A stretch of 23,573 bases of DNA from Macrostomum lignano (taxonomy: Eukaryota), in NCBI GenBank assembly GCA_002269645.1, contig NIVC01005177.1, forward strand, positions 1 to 23,573, read 5' to 3'. This document shows, piece by piece, positions 2,169 through 18,504 of this stretch. Under the pieces are notes generated by a model. The model was not told the DNA's origin, made no database searches, and saw nothing but the letters and a program-made list of their open reading frames with translations. The translations under genes and the position numbers were made by a program. Each line of letters begins with the position of its first letter. Positions within the stretch are counted from its first letter, which is position 1.

Positions 2169-2660
2169 CAAAAGAAAACAAAGAAAAAATCTTTTTTTGA
2201 ATAAAAGTATAGCATTATTATTAGTATACGAGCCGTAGCCGATATTATTATTTGAAAAGCCCAACGCTCAATCAGTGATGGCACGTTCTATTCCATAGGA
2301 TGGTAGCGTTTTAATTTTCTCGGGCAAATTTTAATCTGAGCGCTAATAAGAGGAATGGATTTAAATCGAGGGGCTTATTTGCTTGATTTTGTTTATAATA
2401 GTTGTCAGGAAAATTTAAGGAAAAGTTGGCCTTCACCCGGCAGAGTTTAGTCTCGCATTGTTTTAGTCAAAATTGTACCAGCTGCTCACCTGAAAGAAAA
2501 CAAAAAGGTATAAGACGCTTATAAGAACATATGCGAAATTGCTCTTAAATCCTTGATCATTTCATCCCTCACTAATAATAAATATATAGCCTTATAACCT
2601 TACGTGAGTTATAGTTGAAGCGTCACTCATACTAAGTAGCTGGAGTTTCTGGCTTAATTC

Positions 2661-2953
2661 TTAGTTTCCGTGACGACCGGGCCAGTGGGTCTCCGTGACG
2701 ACCGGGCCAGTGCTGGTCTCCGTGACGACCGGGCCAGTGCTGGTCTCCGTGACGACCGGGCCAGTGCTGGTCTCCGTGACGACCGGGTCAGTGCTGGTCT
2801 CCGTGACGACCGGGTCAGTGCTGGTCTCCGTGACGACCGGGCCAGTGCTGGTCTCCGTGACGACCGGGTCAGTGCTGGTCTCCGTGACGACCGGGCCAGT
2901 GCTGGTCTCCGTCCACGAAGTCGACCCATCTGGATGGACAGTCTTAACCGTTT
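2661..2953 (-). CDS. Last exon: KTVKTVHPDGSTSW + (TETST[G/D]PVV)x8 + TET..., a mucin-like Thr/Ser-rich tail
   Basis: Acceptor CATTTCAG| at 2954. Phase-1 junction A|AA gives Lys. As written it ends TETHWPGRHGN* (stop 2663-2661). If the 2-nt-short unit at 2667-2691 is an error it ends TETSTGPVVTETKN* (stop 2656-2654). Confidence 0.72.
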
Positions 2954-5900
2954 CTGAAATGAGAGGTCAGCAAAACATTTTTGCAGCAAAAAAGGTTCAT
3001 GCACGTACGAGCGTACTACATGTGGCAAAGTTTTCGCTCACTGGTTCTTCCTCCAGAGTGACTGGATGTTGTGCTCGAAGATCCGCCTGCGAAACCGGAG
3101 AAATAATTTAAACATAAGCATGTCTAAACATAAAACCGCAAAACTAAGCTTTCAGTCGTTGAATTTCGTGGAAACTCAAGATACTCACTTCCAACTTTCA
3201 CCGTCTTCCAACCCGACCAACCAGCGCTGCTCTTCTTTATGCCCGCACCCCCAGCTTTGCTCACGACTCCACCATCTAAAGTATTTGCAATTAGATATTA
3301 TAGTTGTAAGAACAACTTTACCAAAAATATGAAATCAAACAAAACTAAAACGCCTGAGCAATATACTCTTAACAGGCTACAGAACACTCACCGGTCGTCT
3401 CCGAGATGAGTGTCTTGTATTCCCAGTTGTAGAGCTGATTCTGCTGCTCGACGATGTCATTAAAAACGTTACTTGTCTTAATGACCTTCGACTGGAGACG
3501 CGATGTGACGCGCGTCAAACCCGATCGCAAAAGCGACCTACTCCGTTTTACCAGCCTCTTAAACTTCGGATTCGAGAGCTTCAACTTCTTCTTAAGAGCC
3601 AAAACTTTCAAAGTCAGCCGCTGCTGCAGTGCCTTAATCTTCAAAAGAGGAATCTTTCTTCGAGTGCTGAGAACCCTTTTAGCTACCCGTTCAACTTGCG
3701 TCTTCATTAATGTTCGCCTGCCAAAAATTCCACGCACTGCGGAGCGAACTCTCAATCTTGGTTGGACCCTCATAATACGCTTAACAGTCCCTCGAATATG
3801 CAATCGCGTCTTAACCGAATTTTTCTTTAAACGCAAAATTCTACGAACGCGACTCAACGATTTCACACGGCTATTCAAGCCTCTTCTCCGTTTGCACGAC
3901 GAGACAGACTATGACCTGCGTATTGACCACTCGTCGTTTAACGATACGTCGCTTACTCACTCGTCGGCGTCGGCGGCGGACTACTTTTCGGCGGACCACG
4001 CGCTTGCGGATCACTCGTCGGCAGATGCGCTTGATCACACGTTTTGTCACGCGTCGTCCCTTAATGACTCGGCGTCGGATGATGCGCTTGATCACGCGTC
4101 GTATCTTGCGTCGGCCCTTAGTCACTCGTTTGCGGACGACTCGTCGGATGATGCGCTTGACCTTGCGGACGCTGCGTTTAATGCGTTTAACGATACGTCG
4201 CTTACTCACTCGTCGGCGTCGGCGGCGGACTACTTTTCGGCGGACCACGCGCTTGCGGATCACTCGTCGGCAGATGCGCTTGATCACACGTTTTGTCACG
4301 CGTCGTCCCTTAATGACTCGGCGTCGGATGATGCGCTTGATCACGCGTCGTATCTGCGTCGGCCCTTAGTCACTCGTTTGCGGACGACTCGTCGGATGAT
4401 GCGCTTGACCTTGCGGACGCTGCGTTTAATGCGTTTAACGATACGTCGCTTACTCACTCGTCGGCGTCGGCGGCGGACTACTTTTCGGCGGACCACGCGC
4501 TTGCGGATCACTCGTCGGCAGATGCGCTTGATCACACGTTTTGTCACGCGTCGTCCCTTAATGACTCGGCGTCGGATGATGCGCTTGATCACGCGTCGTA
4601 TCTGCGTCGGCCCTTAGTCACTCGTTTGCGGACGACTCGTCGGATGATGCGCTTGACCTTGCGGACGCTGCGTTTAATGCGTTTAACGATACGTCGCTTA
4701 CTCACTCGTCGGCGTCGGCGGCGGACTACTTTTCGGCGGACCACGCGCTTGCGGATCACTCGTCGGCAGATGCGCTTGATCACACGTTTTGTCACGCGTC
4801 GTCCCTTAATGACTCGGCGTCGGATGATGCGCTTGATCACGCGTCGTATCTGCGTCGGCCCTTAGTCACTCGTTTGCGGACGACTCGTCGGATGATGCGC
4901 TTGACCTTGCGGACGCTGCGTTTAATGCGTTTAACGATACGTCGCTTACTCACTCGTCGGCGTCGGCGGCGGACTACTTTTCGGCGGACCACGCGCTTGC
5001 GGATCACTCGTCGGCAGATGCGCTTGATCACACGTTTTGTCACGCGTCGTCCCTTAATGACTCGGCGTCGGATGATGCGCTTGATCACGCGTCGTATCTT
5101 GCGTCGGCCCTTAGTCACTCGTTTGCGGACGACTCGTCGGATGATGCGCTTGACCTTGCGGACGCTGCGTTTAATGCGTTTAACGATACGTCGCTTACTC
5201 ACTCGTCGGCGTCGGCGGCGGACTACTTTTCGGCGGACCACGCGCTTGCGGATCACTCGTCGGCAGATGCGCTTGATCACACGTTTTGTCACGCGTCGTC
5301 CCTTAATGACTCGGCGTCGGATGATGCGCTTGATCACGCGTCGTATCTTGCGTCGGCCCTTAGTCACTCGTTTGCGGACGACTCGTCGGATGATGCGCTT
5401 GACCTTGCGGACGCTGCGTTTAATGCGTTTAACGATACGTCGCTTACTCACTCGTCGGCGTCGGCGGCGGACTACTTTTCGGCGGACCACGCGCTTGCGG
5501 ATCACTCGTCGGCAGATGCGCTTGATCACACGTTTTGTCACGCGTCGTCCCTTAATGACTCGGCGTCGGATGATGCGCTTGATCACGCGTCGTATCTTGC
5601 GTCGGCCCTTAGTCACTCGTTTGCGGACGACTCGTCGGATGATGCGCTTGACCTTGCGGACGCTGCGTTTAATGCGTTTAACGATACGTCGCTTACTCAC
5701 TCGTCGGCGTCGGCGGCGGACTACTTTTCGGCGGACCACGCGCTTGCGGATCACTCGTCGGCAGATGCGCTTGATCACACGTTTTGTCACGCGTCGTCCC
5801 TTAATGACTCGGCGTCGGATGATGCGCTTGATCACGCGTCGTATCTTGCGTCGGCCCTTAGTCACTCGTTTGCGGACGACTCGTCGGATGATGCGCTTGA

Positions 5901-8900
5901 CCTTGCGGACGCTGCGTTTAATGCGTTTAACGATACGTCGCTTACTCACTCGTCGGCGTCGGCGGCGGACTACTTTTCGGCGGACCACGCGCTTGCGGAT
6001 CACTCGTCGGCAGATGCGCTTGATCACACGTTTTGTCACGCGTCGTCCCTTAATGACTCGGCGTCGGATGATGCGCTTGATCACGCGTCGTATCTTGCGT
6101 CGGCCCTTAGTCACTCGTTTGCGGACGACTCGTCGGATGATGCGCTTGACCTTGCGGACGCTGCGTTTAATGCGTTTAACGATACGTCGCTTACTCACTC
6201 GTCGGCGTCGGCGGCGGACTACTTTTCGGCGGACCACGCGCTTGCGGATCACTCGTCGGCAGATGCGCTTGATCACACGTTTTGTCACGCGTCGTCCCTT
6301 AATGACTCGGCGTCGGATGATGCGCTTGATCACGCGTCGTATCTTGCGTCGGCCCTTAGTCACTCGTTTGCGGACGACTCGTCGGATGATGCGCTTGACC
6401 TTGCGGACGCTGCGTTTAATGCGTTTAACGATACGTCGCTTACTCACTCGTCGGCGTCGGCGGCGGACTACTTTTCGGCGGACCACGCGCTTGCGGATCA
6501 CTCGTCGGCAGATGCGCTTGATCACACGTTTTGTCACGCGTCGTCCCTTAATGACTCGGCGTCGGATGATGCGCTTGATCACGCGTCGTATCTTGCGTCG
6601 GCCCTTAGTCACTCGTTTGCGGACGACTCGTCGGATGATGCGCTTGACCTTGCGGACGCTGCGTTTAATGCGTTTAACGATACGTCGCTTACTCACTCGT
6701 CGGCGTCGGCGGCGGACTACTTTTCGGCGGACCACGCGCTTGCGGATCACTCGTCGGCAGATGCGCTTGATCACACGTTTTGTCACGCGTCGTCCCTTAA
6801 TGACTCGGCGTCGGATGATGCGCTTGATCACGCGTCGTATCTTGCGTCGGCCCTTAGTCACTCGTTTGCGGACGACTCGTCGGATGATGCGCTTGACCTT
6901 GCGGACGCTGCGTTTAATGCGTTTAACGATACGTCGCTTACTCACTCGTCGGCGTCGGCGGCGGACTACTTTTCGGCGGACCACGCGCTTGCGGATCACT
7001 CGTCGGCAGATGCGCTTGATCACACGTTTTGTCACGCGTCGTCCCTTAATGACTCGGCGTCGGATGATGCGCTTGATCACGCGTCGTATCTTGCGTCGGC
7101 CCTTAGTCACTCGTTTGCGGACGACTCGTCGGATGATGCGCTTGACCTTGCGGACGCTGCGTTTAATGCGTTTAACGATACGTCGCTTACTCACTCGTCG
7201 GCGTCGGCGGCGGACTACTTTTCGGCGGACCACGCGCTTGCGGATCACTCGTCGGCAGATGCGCTTGATCACACGTTTTGTCACGCGTCGTCCCTTAATG
7301 ACTCGGCGTCGGATGATGCGCTTGATCACGCGTCGTATCTTGCGTCGGCCCTTAGTCACTCGTTTGCGGACGACTCGTCGGATGATGCGCTTGACCTTGC
7401 GGACGCTGCGTTTAATGCGTTTAACGATACGTCGCTTACTCACTCGTCGGCGTCGGCGGCGGACTACTTTTCGGCGGACCACGCGCTTGCGGATCACTCG
7501 TCGGCAGATGCGCTTGATCACACGTTTTGTCACGCGTCGTCCCTTAATGACTCGGCGTCGGATGATGCGCTTGATCACGCGTCGTATCTTGCGTCGGCCC
7601 TTAGTCACTCGTTTGCGGACGACTCGTCGGATGATGCGCTTGACCTTGCGGACGCTGCGTTTAATGCGTTTAACGATACGTCGCTTACTCACTCGTCGGC
7701 GTCGGCGGCGGACTACTTTTCGGCGGACCACGCGCTTGCGGATCACTCGTCGGCAGATGCGCTTGATCACACGTTTTGTCACGCGTCGTCCCTTAATGAC
7801 TCGGCGTCGGATGATGCGCTTGATCACGCGTCGTATCTTGCGTCGGCCCTTAGTCACTCGTTTGCGGACGACTCGTCGGATGATGCGCTTGACCTTGCGG
7901 ACGCTGCGTTTAATGCGTTTAACGATACGTCGCTTACTCACTCGTCGGCGTCGGCGGCGGACTACTTTTCGGCGGACCACGCGCTTGCGGATCACTCGTC
8001 GGCAGATGCGCTTGATCACACGTTTTGTCACGCGTCGTCCCTTAATGACTCGGCGTCGGATGATGCGCTTGATCACGCGTCGTATCTTGCGTCGGCCCTT
8101 AGTCACTCGTTTGCGGACGACTCGTCGGATGATGCGCTTGACCTTGCGGACGCTGCGTTTAATGCGTTTAACGATACGTCGCTTACTCACTCGTCGGCGT
8201 CGGCGGCGGACTACTTTTCGGCGGACCACGCGCTTGCGGATCACTCGTCGGCAGATGCGCTTGATCACACGTTTTGTCACGCGTCGTCCCTTAATGACTC
8301 GGCGTCGGATGATGCGCTTGATCACGCGTCGTATCTTGCGTCGGCCCTTAGTCACTCGTTTGCGGACGACTCGTCGGATGATGCGCTTGACCTTGCGGAC
8401 GCTGCGTTTAATGCGTTTAACGATACGTCGCTTACTCACTCGTCGGCGTCGGCGGCGGACTACTTTTCGGCGGACCACGCGCTTGCGGATCACTCGTCGG
8501 CAGATGCGCTTGATCACACGTTTTGTCACGCGTCGTCCCTTAATGACTCGGCGTCGGATGATGCGCTTGATCACGCGTCGTATCTTGCGTCGGCCCTTAG
8601 TCACTCGTTTGCGGACGACTCGTCGGATGATGCGCTTGACCTTGCGGACGCTGCGTTTAATGCGTTTAACGATACGTCGCTTACTCACTCGTCGGCGTCG
8701 GCGGCGGACTACTTTTCGGCGGACCACGCGCTTGCGGATCACTCGTCGGCAGATGCGCTTGATCACACGTTTTGTCACGCGTCGTCCCTTAATGACTCGG
8801 CGTCGGATGATGCGCTTGATCACGCGTCGTATCTTGCGTCGGCCCTTAGTCACTCGTTTGCGGACGACTCGTCGGATGATGCGCTTGACCTTGCGGACGC

Positions 8901-11900
8901 TGCGTTTAATGCGTTTAACGATACGTCGCTTACTCACTCGTCGGCGTCGGCGGCGGACTACTTTTCGGCGGACCACGCGCTTGCGGATCACTCGTCGGCA
9001 GATGCGCTTGATCACACGTTTTGTCACGCGTCGTCCCTTAATGACTCGGCGTCGGATGATGCGCTTGATCACGCGTCGTATCTTGCGTCGGCCCTTAGTC
9101 ACTCGTTTGCGGACGACTCGTCGGATGATGCGCTTGACCTTGCGGACGCTGCGTTTAATGCGTTTAACGATACGTCGCTTACTCACTCGTCGGCGTCGGC
9201 GGCGGACTACTTTTCGGCGGACCACGCGCTTGCGGATCACTCGTCGGCAGATGCGCTTGATCACACGTTTTGTCACGCGTCGTCCCTTAATGACTCGGCG
9301 TCGGATGATGCGCTTGATCACGCGTCGTATCTTGCGTCGGCCCTTAGTCACTCGTTTGCGGACGACTCGTCGGATGATGCGCTTGACCTTGCGGACGCTG
9401 CGTTTAATGCGTTTAACGATACGTCGCTTACTCACTCGTCGGCGTCGGCGGCGGACTACTTTTCGGCGGACCACGCGCTTGCGGATCACTCGTCGGCAGA
9501 TGCGCTTGATCACACGTTTTGTCACGCGTCGTCCCTTAATGACTCGGCGTCGGATGATGCGCTTGATCACGCGTCGTATCTTGCGTCGGCCCTTAGTCAC
9601 TCGTTTGCGGACGACTCGTCGGATGATGCGCTTGACCTTGCGGACGCTGCGTTTAATGCGTTTAACGATACGTCGCTTACTCACTCGTCGGCGTCGGCGG
9701 CGGACTACTTTTCGGCGGACCACGCGCTTGCGGATCACTCGTCGGCAGATGCGCTTGATCACACGTTTTGTCACGCGTCGTCCCTTAATGACTCGGCGTC
9801 GGATGATGCGCTTGATCACGCGTCGTATCTTGCGTCGGCCCTTAGTCACTCGTTTGCGGACGACTCGTCGGATGATGCGCTTGACCTTGCGGACGCTGCG
9901 TTTAATGCGTTTAACGATACGTCGCTTACTCACTCGTCGGCGTCGGCGGCGGACTACTTTTCGGCGGACCACGCGCTTGCGGATCACTCGTCGGCAGATG
10001 CGCTTGATCACACGTTTTGTCACGCGTCGTCCCTTAATGACTCGGCGTCGGATGATGCGCTTGATCACGCGTCGTATCTTGCGTCGGCCCTTAGTCACTC
10101 GTTTGCGGACGACTCGTCGGATGATGCGCTTGACCTTGCGGACGCTGCGTTTAATGCGTTTAACGATACGTCGCTTACTCACTCGTCGGCGTCGGCGGCG
10201 GACTACTTTTCGGCGGACCACGCGCTTGCGGATCACTCGTCGGCAGATGCGCTTGATCACACGTTTTGTCACGCGTCGTCCCTTAATGACTCGGCGTCGG
10301 ATGATGCGCTTGATCACGCGTCGTATCTGCGTCGGCCCTTAGTCACTCGTTTGCGGACGACTCGTCGGATGATGCGCTTGACCTTGCGGACGCTGCGTTT
10401 AATGCGTTTAACGATACGTCGCTTACTCACTCGTCGGCGTCGGCGGCGGACTACTTTTCGGCGGACCACGCGCTTGCGGATCACTCGTCGGCAGATGCGC
10501 TTGATCACACGTTTTGTCACGCGTCGTCCCTTAATGACTCGGCGTCGGATGATGCGCTTGATCACGCGTCGTATCTTGCGTCGGCCCTTAGTCACTCGTT
10601 TGCGGACGACTCGTCGGATGATGCGCTTGACCTTGCGGACGCTGCGTTTAATGCGTTTAACGATACGTCGCTTACTCACTCGTCGGCGTCGGCGGCGGAC
10701 TACTTTTCGGCGGACCACGCGCTTGCGGATCACTCGTCGGCAGATGCGCTTGATCACACGTTTTGTCACGCGTCGTCCCTTAATGACTCGGCGTCGGATG
10801 ATGCGCTTGATCACGCGTCGTATCTTGCGTCGGCCCTTAGTCACTCGTTTGCGGACGACTCGTCGGATGATGCGCTTGACCTTGCGGACGCTGCGTTTAA
10901 TGCGTTTAACGATACGTCGCTTACTCACTCGTCGGCGTCGGCGGCGGACTACTTTTCGGCGGACCACGCGCTTGCGGATCACTCGTCGGCAGATGCGCTT
11001 GATCACACGTTTTGTCACGCGTCGTCCCTTAATGACTCGGCGTCGGATGATGCGCTTGATCACGCGTCGTATCTTGCGTCGGCCCTTAGTCACTCGTTTG
11101 CGGACGACTCGTCGGATGATGCGCTTGACCTTGCGGACGCTGCGTTTAATGCGTTTAACGATACGTCGCTTACTCACTCGTCGGCGTCGGCGGCGGACTA
11201 CTTTTCGGCGGACCACGCGCTTGCGGATCACTCGTCGGCAGATGCGCTTGATCACACGTTTTGTCACGCGTCGTCCCTTAATGACTCGGCGTCGGATGAT
11301 GCGCTTGATCACGCGTCGTATCTTGCGTCGGCCCTTAGTCACTCGTTTGCGGACGACTCGTCGGATGATGCGCTTGACCTTGCGGACGCTGCGTTTAATG
11401 CGTTTAACGATACGTCGCTTACTCACTCGTCGGCGTCGGCGGCGGACTACTTTTCGGCGGACCACGCGCTTGCGGATCACTCGTCGGCAGATGCGCTTGA
11501 TCACACGTTTTGTCACGCGTCGTCCCTTAATGACTCGGCGTCGGATGATGCGCTTGATCACGCGTCGTATCTTGCGTCGGCCCTTAGTCACTCGTTTGCG
11601 GACGACTCGTCGGATGATGCGCTTGACCTTGCGGACGCTGCGTTTAATGCGTTTAACGATACGTCGCTTACTCACTCGTCGGCGTCGGCGGCGGACTACT
11701 TTTCGGCGGACCACGCGCTTGCGGATCACTCGTCGGCAGATGCGCTTGATCACACGTTTTGTCACGCGTCGTCCCTTAATGACTCGGCGTCGGATGATGC
11801 GCTTGATCACGCGTCGTATCTTGCGTCGGCCCTTAGTCACTCGTTTGCGGACGACTCGTCGGATGATGCGCTTGACCTTGCGGACGCTGCGTTTAATGCG

Positions 11901-14900
11901 TTTAACGATACGTCGCTTACTCACTCGTCGGCGTCGGCGGCGGACTACTTTTCGGCGGACCACGCGCTTGCGGATCACTCGTCGGCAGATGCGCTTGATC
12001 ACACGTTTTGTCACGCGTCGTCCCTTAATGACTCGGCGTCGGATGATGCGCTTGATCACGCGTCGTATCTTGCGTCGGCCCTTAGTCACTCGTTTGCGGA
12101 CGACTCGTCGGATGATGCGCTTGACCTTGCGGACGCTGCGTTTAATGCGTTTAACGATACGTCGCTTACTCACTCGTCGGCGTCGGCGGCGGACTACTTT
12201 TCGGCGGACCACGCGCTTGCGGATCACTCGTCGGCAGATGCGCTTGATCACACGTTTTGTCACGCGTCGTCCCTTAATGACTCGGCGTCGGATGATGCGC
12301 TTGATCACGCGTCGTATCTGCGTCGGCCCTTAGTCACTCGTTTGCGGACGACTCGTCGGATGATGCGCTTGACCTTGCGGACGCTGCGTTTAATGCGTTT
12401 AACGATACGTCGCTTACTCACTCGTCGGCGTCGGCGGCGGACTACTTTTCGGCGGACCACGCGCTTGCGGATCACTCGTCGGCAGATGCGCTTGATCACA
12501 CGTTTTGTCACGCGTCGTCCCTTAATGACTCGGCGTCGGATGATGCGCTTGATCACGCGTCGTATCTGCGTCGGCCCTTAGTCACTCGTTTGCGGACGAC
12601 TCGTCGGATGATGCGCTTGACCTTGCGGACGCTGCGTTTAATGCGTTTAACGATACGTCGCTTACTCACTCGTCGGCGTCGGCGGCGGACTACTTTTCGG
12701 CGGACCACGCGCTTGCGGATCACTCGTCGGCAGATGCGCTTGATCACACGTTTTGTCACGCGTCGTCCCTTAATGACTCGGCGTCGGATGATGCGCTTGA
12801 TCACGCGTCGTATCTTGCGTCGGCCCTTAGTCACTCGTTTGCGGACGACTCGTCGGATGATGCGCTTGACCTTGCGGACGCTGCGTTTAATGCGTTTAAC
12901 GATACGTCGCTTACTCACTCGTCGGCGTCGGCGGCGGACTACTTTTCGGCGGACCACGCGCTTGCGGATCACTCGTCGGCAGATGCGCTTGATCACACGT
13001 TTTGTCACGCGTCGTCCCTTAATGACTCGGCGTCGGATGATGCGCTTGATCACGCGTCGTATCTGCGTCGGCCCTTAGTCACTCGTTTGCGGACGACTCG
13101 TCGGATGATGCGCTTGACCTTGCGGACGCTGCGTTTAATGCGTTTAACGATACGTCGCTTACTCACTCGTCGGCGTCGGCGGCGGACTACTTTTCGGCGG
13201 ACCACGCGCTTGCGGATCACTCGTCGGCAGATGCGCTTGATCACACGTTTTGTCACGCGTCGTCCCTTAATGACTCGGCGTCGGATGATGCGCTTGATCA
13301 CGCGTCGTATCTTGCGTCGGCCCTTAGTCACTCGTTTGCGGACGACTCGTCGGATGATGCGCTTGACCTTGCGGACGCTGCGTTTAATGCGTTTAACGAT
13401 ACGTCGCTTACTCACTCGTCGGCGTCGGCGGCGGACTACTTTTCGGCGGACCACGCGCTTGCGGATCACTCGTCGGCAGATGCGCTTGATCACACGTTTT
13501 GTCACGCGTCGTCCCTTAATGACTCGGCGTCGGATGATGCGCTTGATCACGCGTCGTATCTGCGTCGGCCCTTAGTCACTCGTTTGCGGACGACTCGTCG
13601 GATGATGCGCTTGACCTTGCGGACGCTGCGTTTAATGCGTTTAACGATACGTCGCTTACTCACTCGTCGGCGTCGGCGGCGGACTACTTTTCGGCGGACC
13701 ACGCGCTTGCGGATCACTCGTCGGCAGATGCGCTTGATCACACGTTTTGTCACGCGTCGTCCCTTAATGACTCGGCGTCGGATGATGCGCTTGATCACGC
13801 GTCGTATCTTGCGTCGGCCCTTAGTCACTCGTTTGCGGACGACTCGTCGGATGATGCGCTTGACCTTGCGGACGCTGCGTTTAATGCGTTTAACGATACG
13901 TCGCTTACTCACTCGTCGGCGTCGGCGGCGGACTACTTTTCGGCGGACCACGCGCTTGCGGATCACTCGTCGGCAGATGCGCTTGATCACACGTTTTGTC
14001 ACGCGTCGTCCCTTAATGACTCGGCGTCGGATGATGCGCTTGATCACGCGTCGTATCTGCGTCGGCCCTTAGTCACTCGTTTGCGGACGACTCGTCGGAT
14101 GATGCGCTTGACCTTGCGGACGCTGCGTTTAATGCGTTTAACGATACGTCGCTTACTCACTCGTCGGCGTCGGCGGCGGACTACTTTTCGGCGGACCACG
14201 CGCTTGCGGATCACTCGTCGGCAGATGCGCTTGATCACACGTTTTGTCACGCGTCGTCCCTTAATGACTCGGCGTCGGATGATGCGCTTGATCACGCGTC
14301 GTATCTGCGTCGGCCCTTAGTCACTCGTTTGCGGACGACTCGTCGGATGATGCGCTTGACCTTGCGGACGCTGCGTTTAATGCGTTTAACGATACGTCGC
14401 TTACTCACTCGTCGGCGTCGGCGGCGGACTACTTTTCGGCGGACCACGCGCTTGCGGATCACTCGTCGGCAGATGCGCTTGATCACACGTTTTGTCACGC
14501 GTCGTCCCTTAATGACTCGGCGTCGGATGATGCGCTTGATCACGCGTCGTATCTGCGTCGGCCCTTAGTCACTCGTTTGCGGACGACTCGTCGGATGATG
14601 CGCTTGACCTTGCGGACGCTGCGTTTAATGCGTTTAACGATACGTCGCTTACTCACTCGTCGGCGTCGGCGGCGGACTACTTTTCGGCGGACCACGCGCT
14701 TGCGGATCACTCGTCGGCAGATGCGCTTGATCACACGTTTTGTCACGCGTCGTCCCTTAATGACTCGGCGTCGGATGATGCGCTTGATCACGCGTCGTAT
14801 CTGCGTCGGCCCTTAGTCACTCGTTTGCGGACGACTCGTCGGATGATGCGCTTGACCTTGCGGACGCTGCGTTTAATGCGTTTAACGATACGTCGCTTAC

Positions 14901-17900
14901 TCACTCGTCGGCGTCGGCGGCGGACTACTTTTCGGCGGACCACGCGCTTGCGGATCACTCGTCGGCAGATGCGCTTGATCACACGTTTTGTCACGCGTCG
15001 TCCCTTAATGACTCGGCGTCGGATGATGCGCTTGATCACGCGTCGTATCTGGCGTCGGCCCTTAGTCACTCGTTTGCGGACGACTCGTCGGATGATGCGC
15101 TTGACCTTGCGGACGCTGCGTTTAATGCGTTTAACGATACGTCGCTTACTCACTCGTCGGCGTCGGCGGCGGACTACTTTTCGGCGGACCACGCGCTTGC
15201 GGATCACTCGTCGGCAGATGCGCTTGATCACACGTTTTGTCACGCGTCGTCCCTTAATGACTCGGCGTCGGATGATGCGCTTGATCACGCGTCGTATCTG
15301 CGTCGGCCCTTAGTCACTCGTTTGCGGACGACTCGTCGGATGATGCGCTTGACCTTGCGGACGCTGCGTTTAATGCGTTTAACGATACGTCGCTTACTCA
15401 CTCGTCGGCGTCGGCGGCGGACTACTTTTCGGCGGACCACGCGCTTGCGGATCACTCGTCGGCAGATGCGCTTGATCACACGTTTTGTCACGCGTCGTCC
15501 CTTAATGACTCGGCGTCGGATGATGCGCTTGATCACGCGTCGTATCTGGCGTCGGCCCTTAGTCACTCGTTTGCGGACGACTCGTCGGATGATGCGCTTG
15601 ACCTTGCGGACGCTGCGTTTAATGCGTTTAACGATACGTCGCTTACTCACTCGTCGGCGTCGGCGGCGGACTACTTTTCGGCGGACCACGCGCTTGCGGA
15701 TCACTCGTCGGCAGATGCGCTTGATCACACGTTTTGTCACGCGTCGTCCCTTAATGACTCGGCGTCGGATGATGCGCTTGATCACGCGTCGTATCTGGCG
15801 TCGGCCCTTAGTCACTCGTTTGCGGACGACTCGTCGGATGATGCGCTTGACCTTGCGGACGCTGCGTTTAATGCGTTTAACGATACGTCGCTTACTCACT
15901 CGTCGGCGTCGGCGGCGGACTACTTTTCGGCGGACCACGCGCTTGCGGATCACTCGTCGGCAGATGCGCTTGATCACACGTTTTGTCACGCGTCGTCCCT
16001 TAATGACTCGGCGTCGGATGATGCGCTTGATCACGCGTCGTATCTGCGTCGGCCCTTAGTCACTCGTTTGCGGACGACTCGTCGGATGATGCGCTTGACC
16101 TTGCGGACGCTGCGTTTAATGCGTTTAACGATACGTCGCTTACTCACTCGTCGGCGTCGGCGGCGGACTACTTTTCGGCGGACCACGCGCTTGCGGATCA
16201 CTCGTCGGCAGATGCGCTTGATCACACGTTTTGTCACGCGTCGTCCCTTAATGACTCGGCGTCGGATGATGCGCTTGATCACGCGTCGTATCTGCGTCGG
16301 CCCTTAGTCACTCGTTTGCGGACGACTCGTCGATGATGCGCTTGACCTTGCGGACGCTGCGTTTAATGCGTTTAACGATACGTCGCTTACTCACTCGTCG
16401 GCGTCGGCGGCGGACTACTTTTCGGCGGACCACGCGCTTGCGGATCACTCGTCGGCAGATGCGCTTGATCACACGTTTTGTCACGCGTCGTCCCTTAATG
16501 ACTCGGCGTCGGATGATGCGCTTGATCACGCGTCGTATCTGGCGTCGGCCCTTAGTCACTCGTTGCGGACGATCGTCGGAGATGGCTTGACCTTGCGGAC
16601 GCTGCGTTTACGTTTAACGATACGTCGCTTACTCTCGGCGTCGTGGCGGACTACTTTTCGGCGGACCACGCGCTTGCGGATCACTCGTCGGCAGATGCGC
16701 TTGATCACACGTTTTGTCACGCGTCGTCCCTTAATGACTCGGCGTCGGATGATGCGCTTGATCACGCGTCGTATCTGGGTCGGCCCTTAGTCACTCGTTT
16801 GCGGACGACTCGTCGGATGATGCGCTTGACCTTCGGACGCTGCGTTTAATGCGTTTAACGATACGTCGCTTACTCAGTCGGCGTCGGCGGCGGACTACTT
16901 TTCGGCGGACCACGCGCTTGCGGATCACTCGTCGGCAGATGCGCTTGATCACACGTTTTGTCACGCGTCGTGGGATAAATTGATTTCATGTGATCGGAAA
17001 ACTTTCCTGTGTTATTTTGAGTTGAATATGTTTTCATTGTGTTTGGACTCCAGTATACAGCCCTTTATGAAACATTGTACCAAAACTTGCGTTAGTTACG
17101 CAAGAATGTAAGGCATGCACGTTTAGGAGTGACGGAAGAATGTTAAGCGTTAAGTTGTGGTTTTTCACGTGGAATCCCCATTTATCCAATTTCTCCCCAC
17201 AGAGATCCCGTGCTAAAGTGGTCGGGCTTTCTGCATAACGGGAGATGTTTGGCTCCAAATGAAGGGATTGGCGTAGAGAAATCGGGACCCAATTATTCAG
17301 GCTCCATTTTGACTCCTAAGTTTACATCCTCTTTGCTTTATTGACAGTAAATTGTCAGAAAAGGTTGAAGTTGTCAATTTCCTGTGCCCGTTTAATGAGG
17401 AACAATATAAGGAGATCGATTAGGCTCTTGCATAATCTATGGAAAAAGATACACGAGCGACACGAGACTGGCCACGTATCACTACTTGGTGTCGCTTGCT
17501 GGACCACGCGCTTGCGGATCACTCGTCGGCAGATGCGCTTGATCACACGTTTTGTCACGCGTCGTCCCTTAATGACTCGGCGTCGGATGATGCGCTTGAT
17601 CACGCGTCGTATCTGGCGTCGGCCCTTAGTCACTCGTTTGCGGACGACTCGTCGGATGATGCGCTTGACCTTGCGGACGCTGCGTTTAATGCGTTTAACG
17701 ATACGTCGCTTACTCACTCGTCGGCGTCGGCGGCGGACTATTTTCGGCGGACCACGCGCTTGCGGATCACTCGTCGGCAGATGCGCTTGATCACACGTTT
17801 TGTCACGCGTCGTCCCTTAATGACTCGGCGTCGGATGATGCGCTTGATCACGCGTCGTATCTGCGTCGGCCCTTAGTCACTCGTTTGCGGACGACTCGTC

Positions 17901-18504
17901 GGATGATGCGCTTGACCTTGCGGACGCTGCGTTTAATGCGTTTAACGATACGTCGCTTACTCACTCGTCGGCGTCGGCGGCGGACTACTTTTCGGCGGAC
18001 GCACGCGCTTGCGGATCACTCGTCGGCAGATGCGCTTGATCACACGTTTTGTCACGCGTCGTCCCTTAATGACGGGCGTCGGATGATGCGCTTGATCACG
18101 CGTCGTATCTGAACATCCCAGAAAGACCGGCATTATTAGCAGTGTATAAAAACCTGTTGCGATAGAAAAGAACAGGAAAGAGTGTCCAATGCGGGGGAAG
18201 AAGCGTCCAAGGCGGGGAAAGAGTGTCTAAGGGAGGGAGTGTCCGAAAGACAGGAAAGATGCCCAAAGGACCAGAGGACAGGAAGTGTCCAAAGAACAGG
18301 ACAGGACGCAGTGGAACATTTAGCATGCATTTACCGGTATGCATGAGATTCGCCAATAGGCAAGAGATGTGTAAGAGCGATTGAAACAAAGGACACAGGC
18401 TAACACAACAGCTTACTCTTGGCTGGAAGGCTGGATAAGCTGGCACCATTGGCGGACATGGCTGCCCAGACAGCGAGGATCAGCAGCAGCAGCCAGAGCC
18501 TCAT
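2661..18504 (-). CDS. Giant secreted Arg/Lys/Ile/Val-repeat protein gene. Proposed exons: 18504-18417, 18108 (or 18153)-3392, 3275-3189, 3086-3042, 2953-2661 (or 2654)
   Basis: Signal-peptide exon. Four GT-AG introns, all phase 1, join open frames exactly (internal exons of 87 and 45 nt). The unique tail and repeat share a basic composition. Frame breaks remain at the 248-bp units, 18001, the 16972-17500 insert, the degenerate units at 16330-16880 and 3909-3960. Confidence 0.72.
2667..2911. repeat. 27-bp coding tandem repeat, 9 units (8 x 27 bp + 1 x 25 bp)
   Basis: TCCGTGACGACCGGG[C/T]CAGTGCTGGTC repeated. The C/T variant gives Gly/Asp on the minus strand. Confidence 0.95.
3042..3086 (-). 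CDS. 45-nt micro-exon: SGSSSTTSSHSGGRT
   Basis: Acceptor TTTCGCAG| (3087) and donor |GTGAGC (3041). Phase 1-1, open frame. Flanking introns are 102 and 88 nt. Confidence 0.72.
3189..3275 (-). CDS. 87-nt exon: DGGVVSKAGGAGIKKSSAGWSGWKTVKVG
   Basis: Acceptor TACTTTAG| (3276) and donor |GTGAGT (3188). Phase 1-1, open frame. Upstream intron is 116 nt. Confidence 0.75.
3392..3908 (-). CDS. Unique basic tail following the repeat array: SVSSCKRRRGLNSRVKSLSRVRRILRLKK...NQLYNWEYKTLISETT
   Basis: Same frame as ORF 3369..3878 extended upstream to 3908. R/K-rich composition fades to neutral. Ends at donor ACCG|GTGAGT (intron starts at 3391) before the ORF's stop. Confidence 0.72.
3935..16971. repeat. 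Main 249/248-bp tandem array, about 52 units; the minus strand encodes IRRVIKRIIRRRVIKGRRVTKRVIKRICRRVIRKRVVRRKVVRRRRRRVSKRRIVKRIKRSVRKVKRIIRRVVRKRVTKGRR[K/Q]
   Basis: Period read directly; ORF lengths are multiples of 83 aa (1826 = 22 x 83, 664 = 8 x 83). Units look identical except one site, plus indels in 16330-16880. Confidence 0.98.
16972..17500. other. 529-bp AT-rich non-repeat segment interrupting the array (insertion, unresolved intron or assembly artefact)
   Basis: The repeat stops at ...CACGCGTCGT (16971) and resumes at GGACCACGCG (17501). No GT-AG at the boundaries, no terminal inverted repeats and no recognisable protein. Confidence 0.6.
17501..18111. repeat. Second block of the 249-bp array, about 2.4 units (5' end of the coding repeat)
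   Basis: Same unit sequence. It ends exactly at the proposed acceptor TTCAG|ATACGA on the minus strand. Confidence 0.95.
18109..18416 (-). other. Intron 1 of the giant gene (308 nt; alternative acceptor at 18154 gives 263 nt), containing degenerate GGAAAGAGTGTCC-like repeats
   Basis: Donor AAGA|GTAAGC. A CTAAT branch-like motif lies about 27 nt upstream of TTCAG. A second acceptor, TTTTCTATCGCAACAG, lies 45 nt upstream in the same phase. Confidence 0.65.
18417..18504 (-). CDS. Exon 1, signal peptide: MRLWLLLLILAVWAAMSANG^ASLSSLPAK
   Basis: ATG at 18504 with A at -3 is the first in-frame ATG after an upstream TGA. Clear n/h/c regions with an A-N-G cleavage motif. 88 nt = 29 codons + 1, followed by GTAAGC. 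Confidence 0.8.

What the first reader, a model, noticed from the sequence alone, without database searches (positions are those of the whole stretch)
2661..18504. Hidden giant secreted polycation: signal peptide, about 55 x 83-aa Arg/Lys-Ile/Val repeats and a mucin-like tail
Seen: what looks like a 13-kb satellite sits between a signal-peptide exon (18504-18417) and three downstream exons. All four introns are GT-AG and phase 1, and the downstream joins are exactly in frame. Each unit has R34 K14 V16 I12 G2 T2 S2 C1, no acidic or aromatic residues, and a net charge of +48. That is roughly +2,600 over a protein of about 4,900 aa. Known: giant K/R-rich secreted repeat proteins occur in flatworm temporary adhesion (Macrostomum Mlig-ap1), but that protein has C-type lectin, vWD and EGF domains that are not visible here. 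Inference: an unrecognised gland product (adhesive, mucus, defence or egg/sperm-associated).
Basis: partly seen in the sequence, partly recalled or inferred. Interest (0 to 1): 0.9.

Follow-up and report, generated by a model that had tools for sequence, protein, structure and literature searches.

The report
Unannotated flatworm polycation repeat gene, broken here
The 13-kb "satellite" belongs to a Macrostomum flatworm gene whose 3' end is demonstrably spliced and translated and which would encode a huge, secreted, extremely positively charged repeat protein, but the copy in this window is not one open reading frame: it is cut into 22 frame pieces.

Summary
The sequence facts hold. There are about 55 copies of a 249-bp unit. 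Its minus-strand frame reads 83 aa (R34 V16 K14 I12 S2 T2 G2 C1, net +48). A signal-peptide-like exon lies upstream, and three small GT-AG phase-1 exons with a T/S/P 9-aa repeat tail lie downstream.

The "hidden giant ORF" is not intact here:
- The R/K frame changes 21 times. Sixteen units are 248 bp, all at one site.
- A 529-bp insert with stops interrupts the array.
- The array-to-tail junction needs one more frameshift.
- The longest open run is 1,833 codons.

The gene is real at its 3' end. The tail matches one Macrostomum lignano UniRef model (96% over 127 aa). The junction peptide TLISETTDGGVVSK is listed in the published footprint mass-spectrometry data (Wunderer 2019, Dataset S2). That database entry's size, mass and pI fit only if about 70 codons of the R/K frame are read in frame with the tail.

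No protein among 5.8 billion matches the array in any frame tested.

Best reading: an unannotated, Macrostomum-specific secreted polycation. It resembles the GRK-rich flanks of Mlig-ap1 and the stand-alone ap3 of other flatworms, but it is V/I-rich and shows no homology to them. This copy is either mis-assembled or decaying.

The parts
18417..18504 (-). Exon 1: ATG plus a 29-codon signal-peptide-like sequence (MRLWLLLLILAVWAAMSANGASLSSLPAK). It ends in phase 1, with donor GTAAGC at 18416.
   Evidence: It has an n-region (MR), a 13-residue hydrophobic core, and small residues at candidate cleavage sites (judged by eye). No signal-peptide predictor was available, and there is no RNA evidence.
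18109..18416 (-). Intron 1 (308 nt, GT-AG). Its acceptor ttcag ends exactly where the array begins.
   Evidence: The junction is inferred only.
17501..18108 (-). 5' block of about 2.5 degenerate units. Spliced to exon 1, it reads NTTRDQAHHPTP. A 1-nt deletion peculiar to this unit (CCGAGTC to CCCGTC) then removes the stop in that frame and shifts into the R/K frame for 23 codons. A +1 insertion near 18001 breaks the frame again, and further 1-nt shifts lie near 17867 and 17745.
16972..17500 (-). 529-bp non-repeat insert (41% GC, contains stops). It is flanked by identical 65-bp array sequence (16907-16971 = 17501-17565). No GT-AG boundaries were found by eye. It is unique within the window.
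3935..16971 (-). Main array of 249-bp (83-codon) units encoding ICRRVIRKRVVRRKVVRRRRRRVSKRRIVKRIKRSVRKVKRIIRRVVRKRVTKGRRKIRRVIKRIIRRRVIKGRRVTKRVIKR. From about 16.2 kb downward the units are identical except at one three-state site: AA in 32 units, CA in 5, and the single-A 248-bp form in 16. The three units at 16.9-16.3 kb carry additional frame-breaking deletions (244, 236 and 247 bp).
4840..10338 (-). Longest uninterrupted R/K reading frame in the window (1,833 codons, 22 units).
3874..3934 (-). Degenerate array-to-tail junction. The R/K frame ends at TAG 3876-3874, and the tail frame opens after TAG 3911-3909. One frameshift is needed. Tail-frame CKRRRG aligns with the unit's RKRVTKG.
3392..3908 (-). 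Unique 3' part of the giant exon. It has a degenerate basic/hydrophobic region (K/R with L/V/I), then TSNVFNDIVEQQNQLYNWEYKTLISETT. It is 172 codons, open, and ends in phase 1 with donor GTGAGT.
   Evidence: It is 96% identical over 127 aa to P0001. The peptide TLISETTDGGVVSK starts here.
3189..3275 (-). Exon 3 (87 nt, phase 1-1): DGGVVSKAGGAGIKKSSAGWSGWKTVKVG.
   Evidence: The junction with exon 2 is confirmed by P0001 and by the MS peptide.
3042..3086 (-). Exon 4 (45 nt, phase 1-1, S/T-rich). It is a candidate cassette exon and is skipped in the UniRef model.
   Evidence: Its inclusion is unverified.
2661..2953 (-). Exon 5: KTVKTVHPDGSTSW, then nine 27-bp repeats (2667-2912) encoding TETST(G/D)PVV, a mucin-type T/S/P tail. 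A 2-nt loss in the last repeat leads to TAA at 2663-2661.
   Evidence: The exon 3 to exon 5 junction is present in P0001.
2463..2489 (-). Alternative terminal exon VSSWYNFD* (acceptor tttcag), used by the UniRef model.

Best explanation
WHAT IT IS
This is a Macrostomum-specific (orphan) gene for a secreted, hyper-cationic repeat protein. Its layout is:
- a signal peptide;
- a short linker;
- a recently amplified and homogenised coding minisatellite of 83-aa R/K/V/I units;
- a degenerate basic region;
- a small unique segment;
- an O-glycosylation-type T/S/P repeat tail.

HOW IT PROBABLY WORKS (inferred)
The protein enters the secretory pathway. It is stored charge-neutralised by a polyanion. 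After release it acts as a polyelectrolyte that binds anionic glycans and surfaces. The regularly spaced V/I pairs would add hydrophobic cohesion, and the glycosylated tail would give hydration or a second binding mode. This would make it a cohesive or mucus-type gland product. It would work like the GRK-rich regions of Mlig-ap1 or the stand-alone ap3 of other flatworms.

SHOWN VERSUS INFERRED
- Shown: the 3' exons are spliced and translated. By mass and pI, the R/K frame is read in frame with the tail in the transcriptome.
- Inferred: the signal exon is joined to the array, many units are in one mRNA, the protein is secreted, and it has the proposed function.

THIS COPY
The copy in this window cannot produce the giant protein as assembled. 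I attribute the recurrent 248-bp units to consensus artefacts at the one variable site. The scattered lesions at the 5' edge and the insert may be real decay of this paralogue.
For: - Unit length is 249 = 83 x 3. One frame uses 19 codons for only 8 amino acids, 92% of them R/K/V/I.
- The tail downstream stays basic and hydrophobic, and is open for 172 codons. It continues through three GT-AG phase-1 junctions.
- The sole homologue among 5.8 billion and 1.84 billion proteins is M. lignano A0A1I8JLP0. It reproduces junction 3392/3275 and the exon 3 to exon 5 join.
- Peptide TLISETTDGGVVSK spans the exon 2/3 junction. It is listed in Dataset S2 of PMC6410801 (adhesive footprints) with 1 PSM, XCorr 3.8, under transcript RNA1509_11197.
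- That entry is 261 aa, 31.098 kDa, pI 12.66. Tail-only 261-aa windows give 28.2-29.1 kDa and pI 11.96 or less. Adding about 70-80 R/K-frame residues gives 31.0-31.2 kDa and pI 12.64-12.67. The extra residues must average 124-133 Da, where the R/K unit averages 128 and the other frames 100-108.
- The contig appears to stop about 213 nt into the array. That is what a short-read assembler does when a transcript holds two or more identical units (inference).
- The signal-like exon lies on the same strand, and its acceptor is exactly at the array start. The first unit carries a private 1-nt deletion that removes the wrong-frame stop and brings the phase-1 splice into the R/K frame.
- Stand-alone secreted giant K/R repeat proteins exist in flatworms. 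Tmed-ap3 is 3,700 aa with a signal peptide.
Against: - The window has 21 frame changes, a 529-bp insert with stops, and a shifted tail junction.
- The indels in the 5' 1.9 kb are diverse and mostly 1 nt. That is what unconstrained DNA looks like.
- Two antisense frames are also open.
- There is no RNA evidence for exon 1 or for more than about one unit.
- Only one PSM supports translation, and the footprint sample also holds cytosolic proteins.
- The mass and pI argument is indirect, because the transcript sequence itself was not seen.
- There is no detectable homology between the unit and the tail at protein level. There is also none to any known adhesive protein.
- AlphaFold on two units is uninformative (pLDDT 45).
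Confidence: 0.58

Rival explanations
1. Decaying paralogue. The gene family is real, but this particular copy is a pseudogene. The 248-bp units, the 5' indels, the 529-bp insertion and the junction shift are genuine mutations. The expressed protein comes from another copy, such as the locus behind A0A1I8JLP0.
For: - There are many independent lesions.
- The 5' lesions are of varied size and position. The 12-kb interior has none outside one site, which argues against random sequencing error.
- The window differs from P0001 at about 4% of tail residues, so at least two copies exist.
- The inferred transcript is in frame at the junction, where the window is not.
Against: - All four downstream exons, their splice sites and the 172-codon tail are intact.
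- All 16 interior frameshifts are the same 1-nt loss at the only polymorphic site. That is a plausible consensus artefact.
- Near-perfect identity of the interior units implies very recent homogenisation or a collapsed assembly.
Confidence: 0.35
2. Non-coding satellite next to a small gene. The array is an ordinary CpG-rich minisatellite lying in the 5' region or first intron. The real product is only the roughly 185-315-aa basic tail protein. The R/K frame is a by-product of the unit's base composition.
For: - Three of six frames of the unit are open.
- The window is full of other minisatellites.
- The public gene model starts at the first Met after the array.
- No protein database entry contains the repeat in any frame tested.
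- The frame is not preserved along the array.
Against: - The mass and pI of the database entry require about 70 R/K-frame residues in frame with the tail.
- The unit and its 57-bp sub-repeat are multiples of 3.
- A Met-initiated tail would lack the signal peptide that its mucin-type repeats presuppose.
- The acceptor lies exactly at the array start, and the first unit carries a frame-adjusting deletion.
Confidence: 0.15
3. Same protein, different job. It could be a polyprotein precursor of cationic antimicrobial or defence peptides. It could also be an eggshell, cement-gland, rhabdite or seminal product rather than an adhesion-type cohesive polycation.
For: - Cationic units with regularly spaced hydrophobic pairs and a weak helical tendency resemble membrane-active peptides.
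- Footprint samples collect any surface secretion and cell debris.
- The transcript is absent from the tail-specific candidate lists whose supplements could be searched.
Against: - There are no spacer or processing architecture and no acidic pro-regions. Dibasic sites occur every few residues, so convertases would shred the protein.
- The only protein evidence comes from the footprint material.
Confidence: 0.2
4. It is part of Mlig-ap1, being one of its KR regions.
For: Mlig-ap1 has more than 3,600 aa of K/R-rich repeats with pI above 14.
Against: - Mlig-ap1 was built from transcripts RNA815_13121.1-3, _317.1 and _27695.1-2. This gene corresponds to RNA815_21129.1.
- This gene has its own signal exon and its own stop.
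- There are no lectin, vWD, C8, TIL or EGF domains in the window.
- Mlig-ap1 repeats are described as G/R/K-rich, with the example peptide SRKPRRKNRKSRKP. They are not V/I-rich.
Confidence: 0.03

Closest known systems
Flatworm adhesion protein 3 (Tmed-ap3 of Theama mediterranea; Mile-ap3 of Minona ileanae)
   Same: It is a stand-alone secreted protein of several thousand residues with an N-terminal signal peptide. It is made almost entirely of a low-complexity K/R-rich repeat and is encoded by giant repetitive exons that short-read assemblies break (PMC9229212).
   Different: - ap3 is G/R/K/H/S-rich ("GRKHS"). Here 34% of residues are V/I, and there is almost no G, H or S.
- The unit here is a long 83-aa repeat.
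- There is a unique C-terminal segment and a T/S/P repeat tail.
- No sequence similarity was found.
- The expression site is unknown.
- M. lignano is reported to carry its GRK regions inside ap1, not as a separate ap3.
Mlig-ap1 (M. lignano adhesion protein 1), KR/GRK regions A-C
   Same: It comes from the same organism. It has an extreme positive charge (pI above 14), more than 3,600 aa of K/R repeats, and is secreted. It is proposed to bind anionic glycans and to be released by a polyanion (PMC6410801).
   Different: - It is a different gene with different transcripts.
- Mlig-ap1 has a C-type lectin / vWD / C8 / TIL / 17-EGF core, which is absent here.
- The repeat composition differs.
Mucin-type PTS tandem repeats
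   Same: The C-terminus has nine 9-aa TETST(G/D)PVV repeats, 55% Thr/Ser plus Pro, behind a signal peptide.
   Different: It is only about 80 aa long and is attached to a polycation rather than to a mucin core. Glycosylation was not tested.
Arginine-rich sperm nuclear basic proteins / protamines
   Same: Very high Arg content and a polyanion-binding character.
   Different: Those proteins are small, nuclear, and lack signal peptides and mucin tails (own knowledge). Nothing here points to chromatin.
Ordinary non-coding minisatellite
   Same: Near-identical head-to-tail units, more divergent edge units, and a neighbourhood full of other minisatellites.
   Different: The unit is a multiple of 3, has a strongly protein-like frame, and is contiguous with a translated gene.

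Membership tests
Flatworm ap3-type stand-alone GRK cohesive protein | N-terminal signal peptide | tested here: inconclusive
   Exon 1 reads MRLWLLLLILAVWAAMSANGASLSSLPAK, which is canonical by eye. No predictor was available and no RNA links it to the array.
Flatworm ap3-type stand-alone GRK cohesive protein | Most of the protein is a K/R-rich low-complexity repeat of thousands of residues | tested here: inconclusive
   About 55 units of 83 aa are 58% R+K, but the frame is broken 21 times in this window. Only about 70 array codons are supported by the transcript inference.
Flatworm ap3-type stand-alone GRK cohesive protein | G/R/K(/H/S) composition | tested here: not met
   The unit has G 2, S 2 and H 0 of 83 residues, and V+I = 28 of 83. 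Tmed-ap3 is 87.7% K/R/G/H/S.
Flatworm ap3-type stand-alone GRK cohesive protein | Sequence homology to ap3 or the ap1 flanks | tested here: not met
   No hit for the unit in 5.8 billion proteins. Whether the ap sequences are in that collection is not known.
Flatworm ap3-type stand-alone GRK cohesive protein | Expression in adhesive gland cells; non-adhesive RNAi phenotype | not testable with these tools
   The only lead is one peptide in footprint mass spectrometry.
Mlig-ap1 | C-type lectin, vWD, C8, TIL and EGF core between the KR regions | tested here: not met
   No Pfam domain was found in the tail, the unit, or the six longest open frames in and beside the array. These are the only non-minisatellite ORFs of 90 aa or more outside it.
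Mlig-ap1 | Identity with the transcripts used to build MH586844 | tested here: not met
   This gene's transcript ids (RNA1509_11197 / RNA815_21129.1 / RNA1310_35425) are not among the six Mlig-ap1 transcripts.
Protein-coding tandem repeat (as opposed to non-coding satellite) | Unit length a multiple of 3 and one frame with protein-like, stop-free content | tested here: met
   249 = 83 x 3, and 19 codons encode 8 amino acids. However, two antisense frames are also open.
Protein-coding tandem repeat (as opposed to non-coding satellite) | Frame conserved along the whole array | tested here: not met
   22 frame segments and an insert with stops.
Protein-coding tandem repeat (as opposed to non-coding satellite) | Transcribed and translated | tested here: inconclusive
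   The tail is confirmed by a peptide. The array is supported only through the mass and pI of the database entry.
Mucin-type PTS domain | Tandem Thr/Ser/Pro-rich repeats in a secreted protein, O-glycosylated | tested here: inconclusive
   The composition is met. Glycosylation cannot be tested here.

The most novel reading that the evidence does not exclude
M. lignano (and perhaps only the genus Macrostomum) makes a stand-alone secreted protein of about 4,700 aa with a net charge near +2,600. It is built from 83-aa R/K/V/I units. This would be a hydrophobic-cationic polyelectrolyte unlike the glycine-rich GRK repeats of ap1 and ap3. It would be deposited in footprints and would act as a so far overlooked component of the temporary-adhesion, release or mucus system. 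Annotation would have missed it because tandem-repeat masking hides it.
Probability: 0.35. Interest if true: 0.7.

Novelty: new variant of a known kind. Interest (0 to 1): 0.55.

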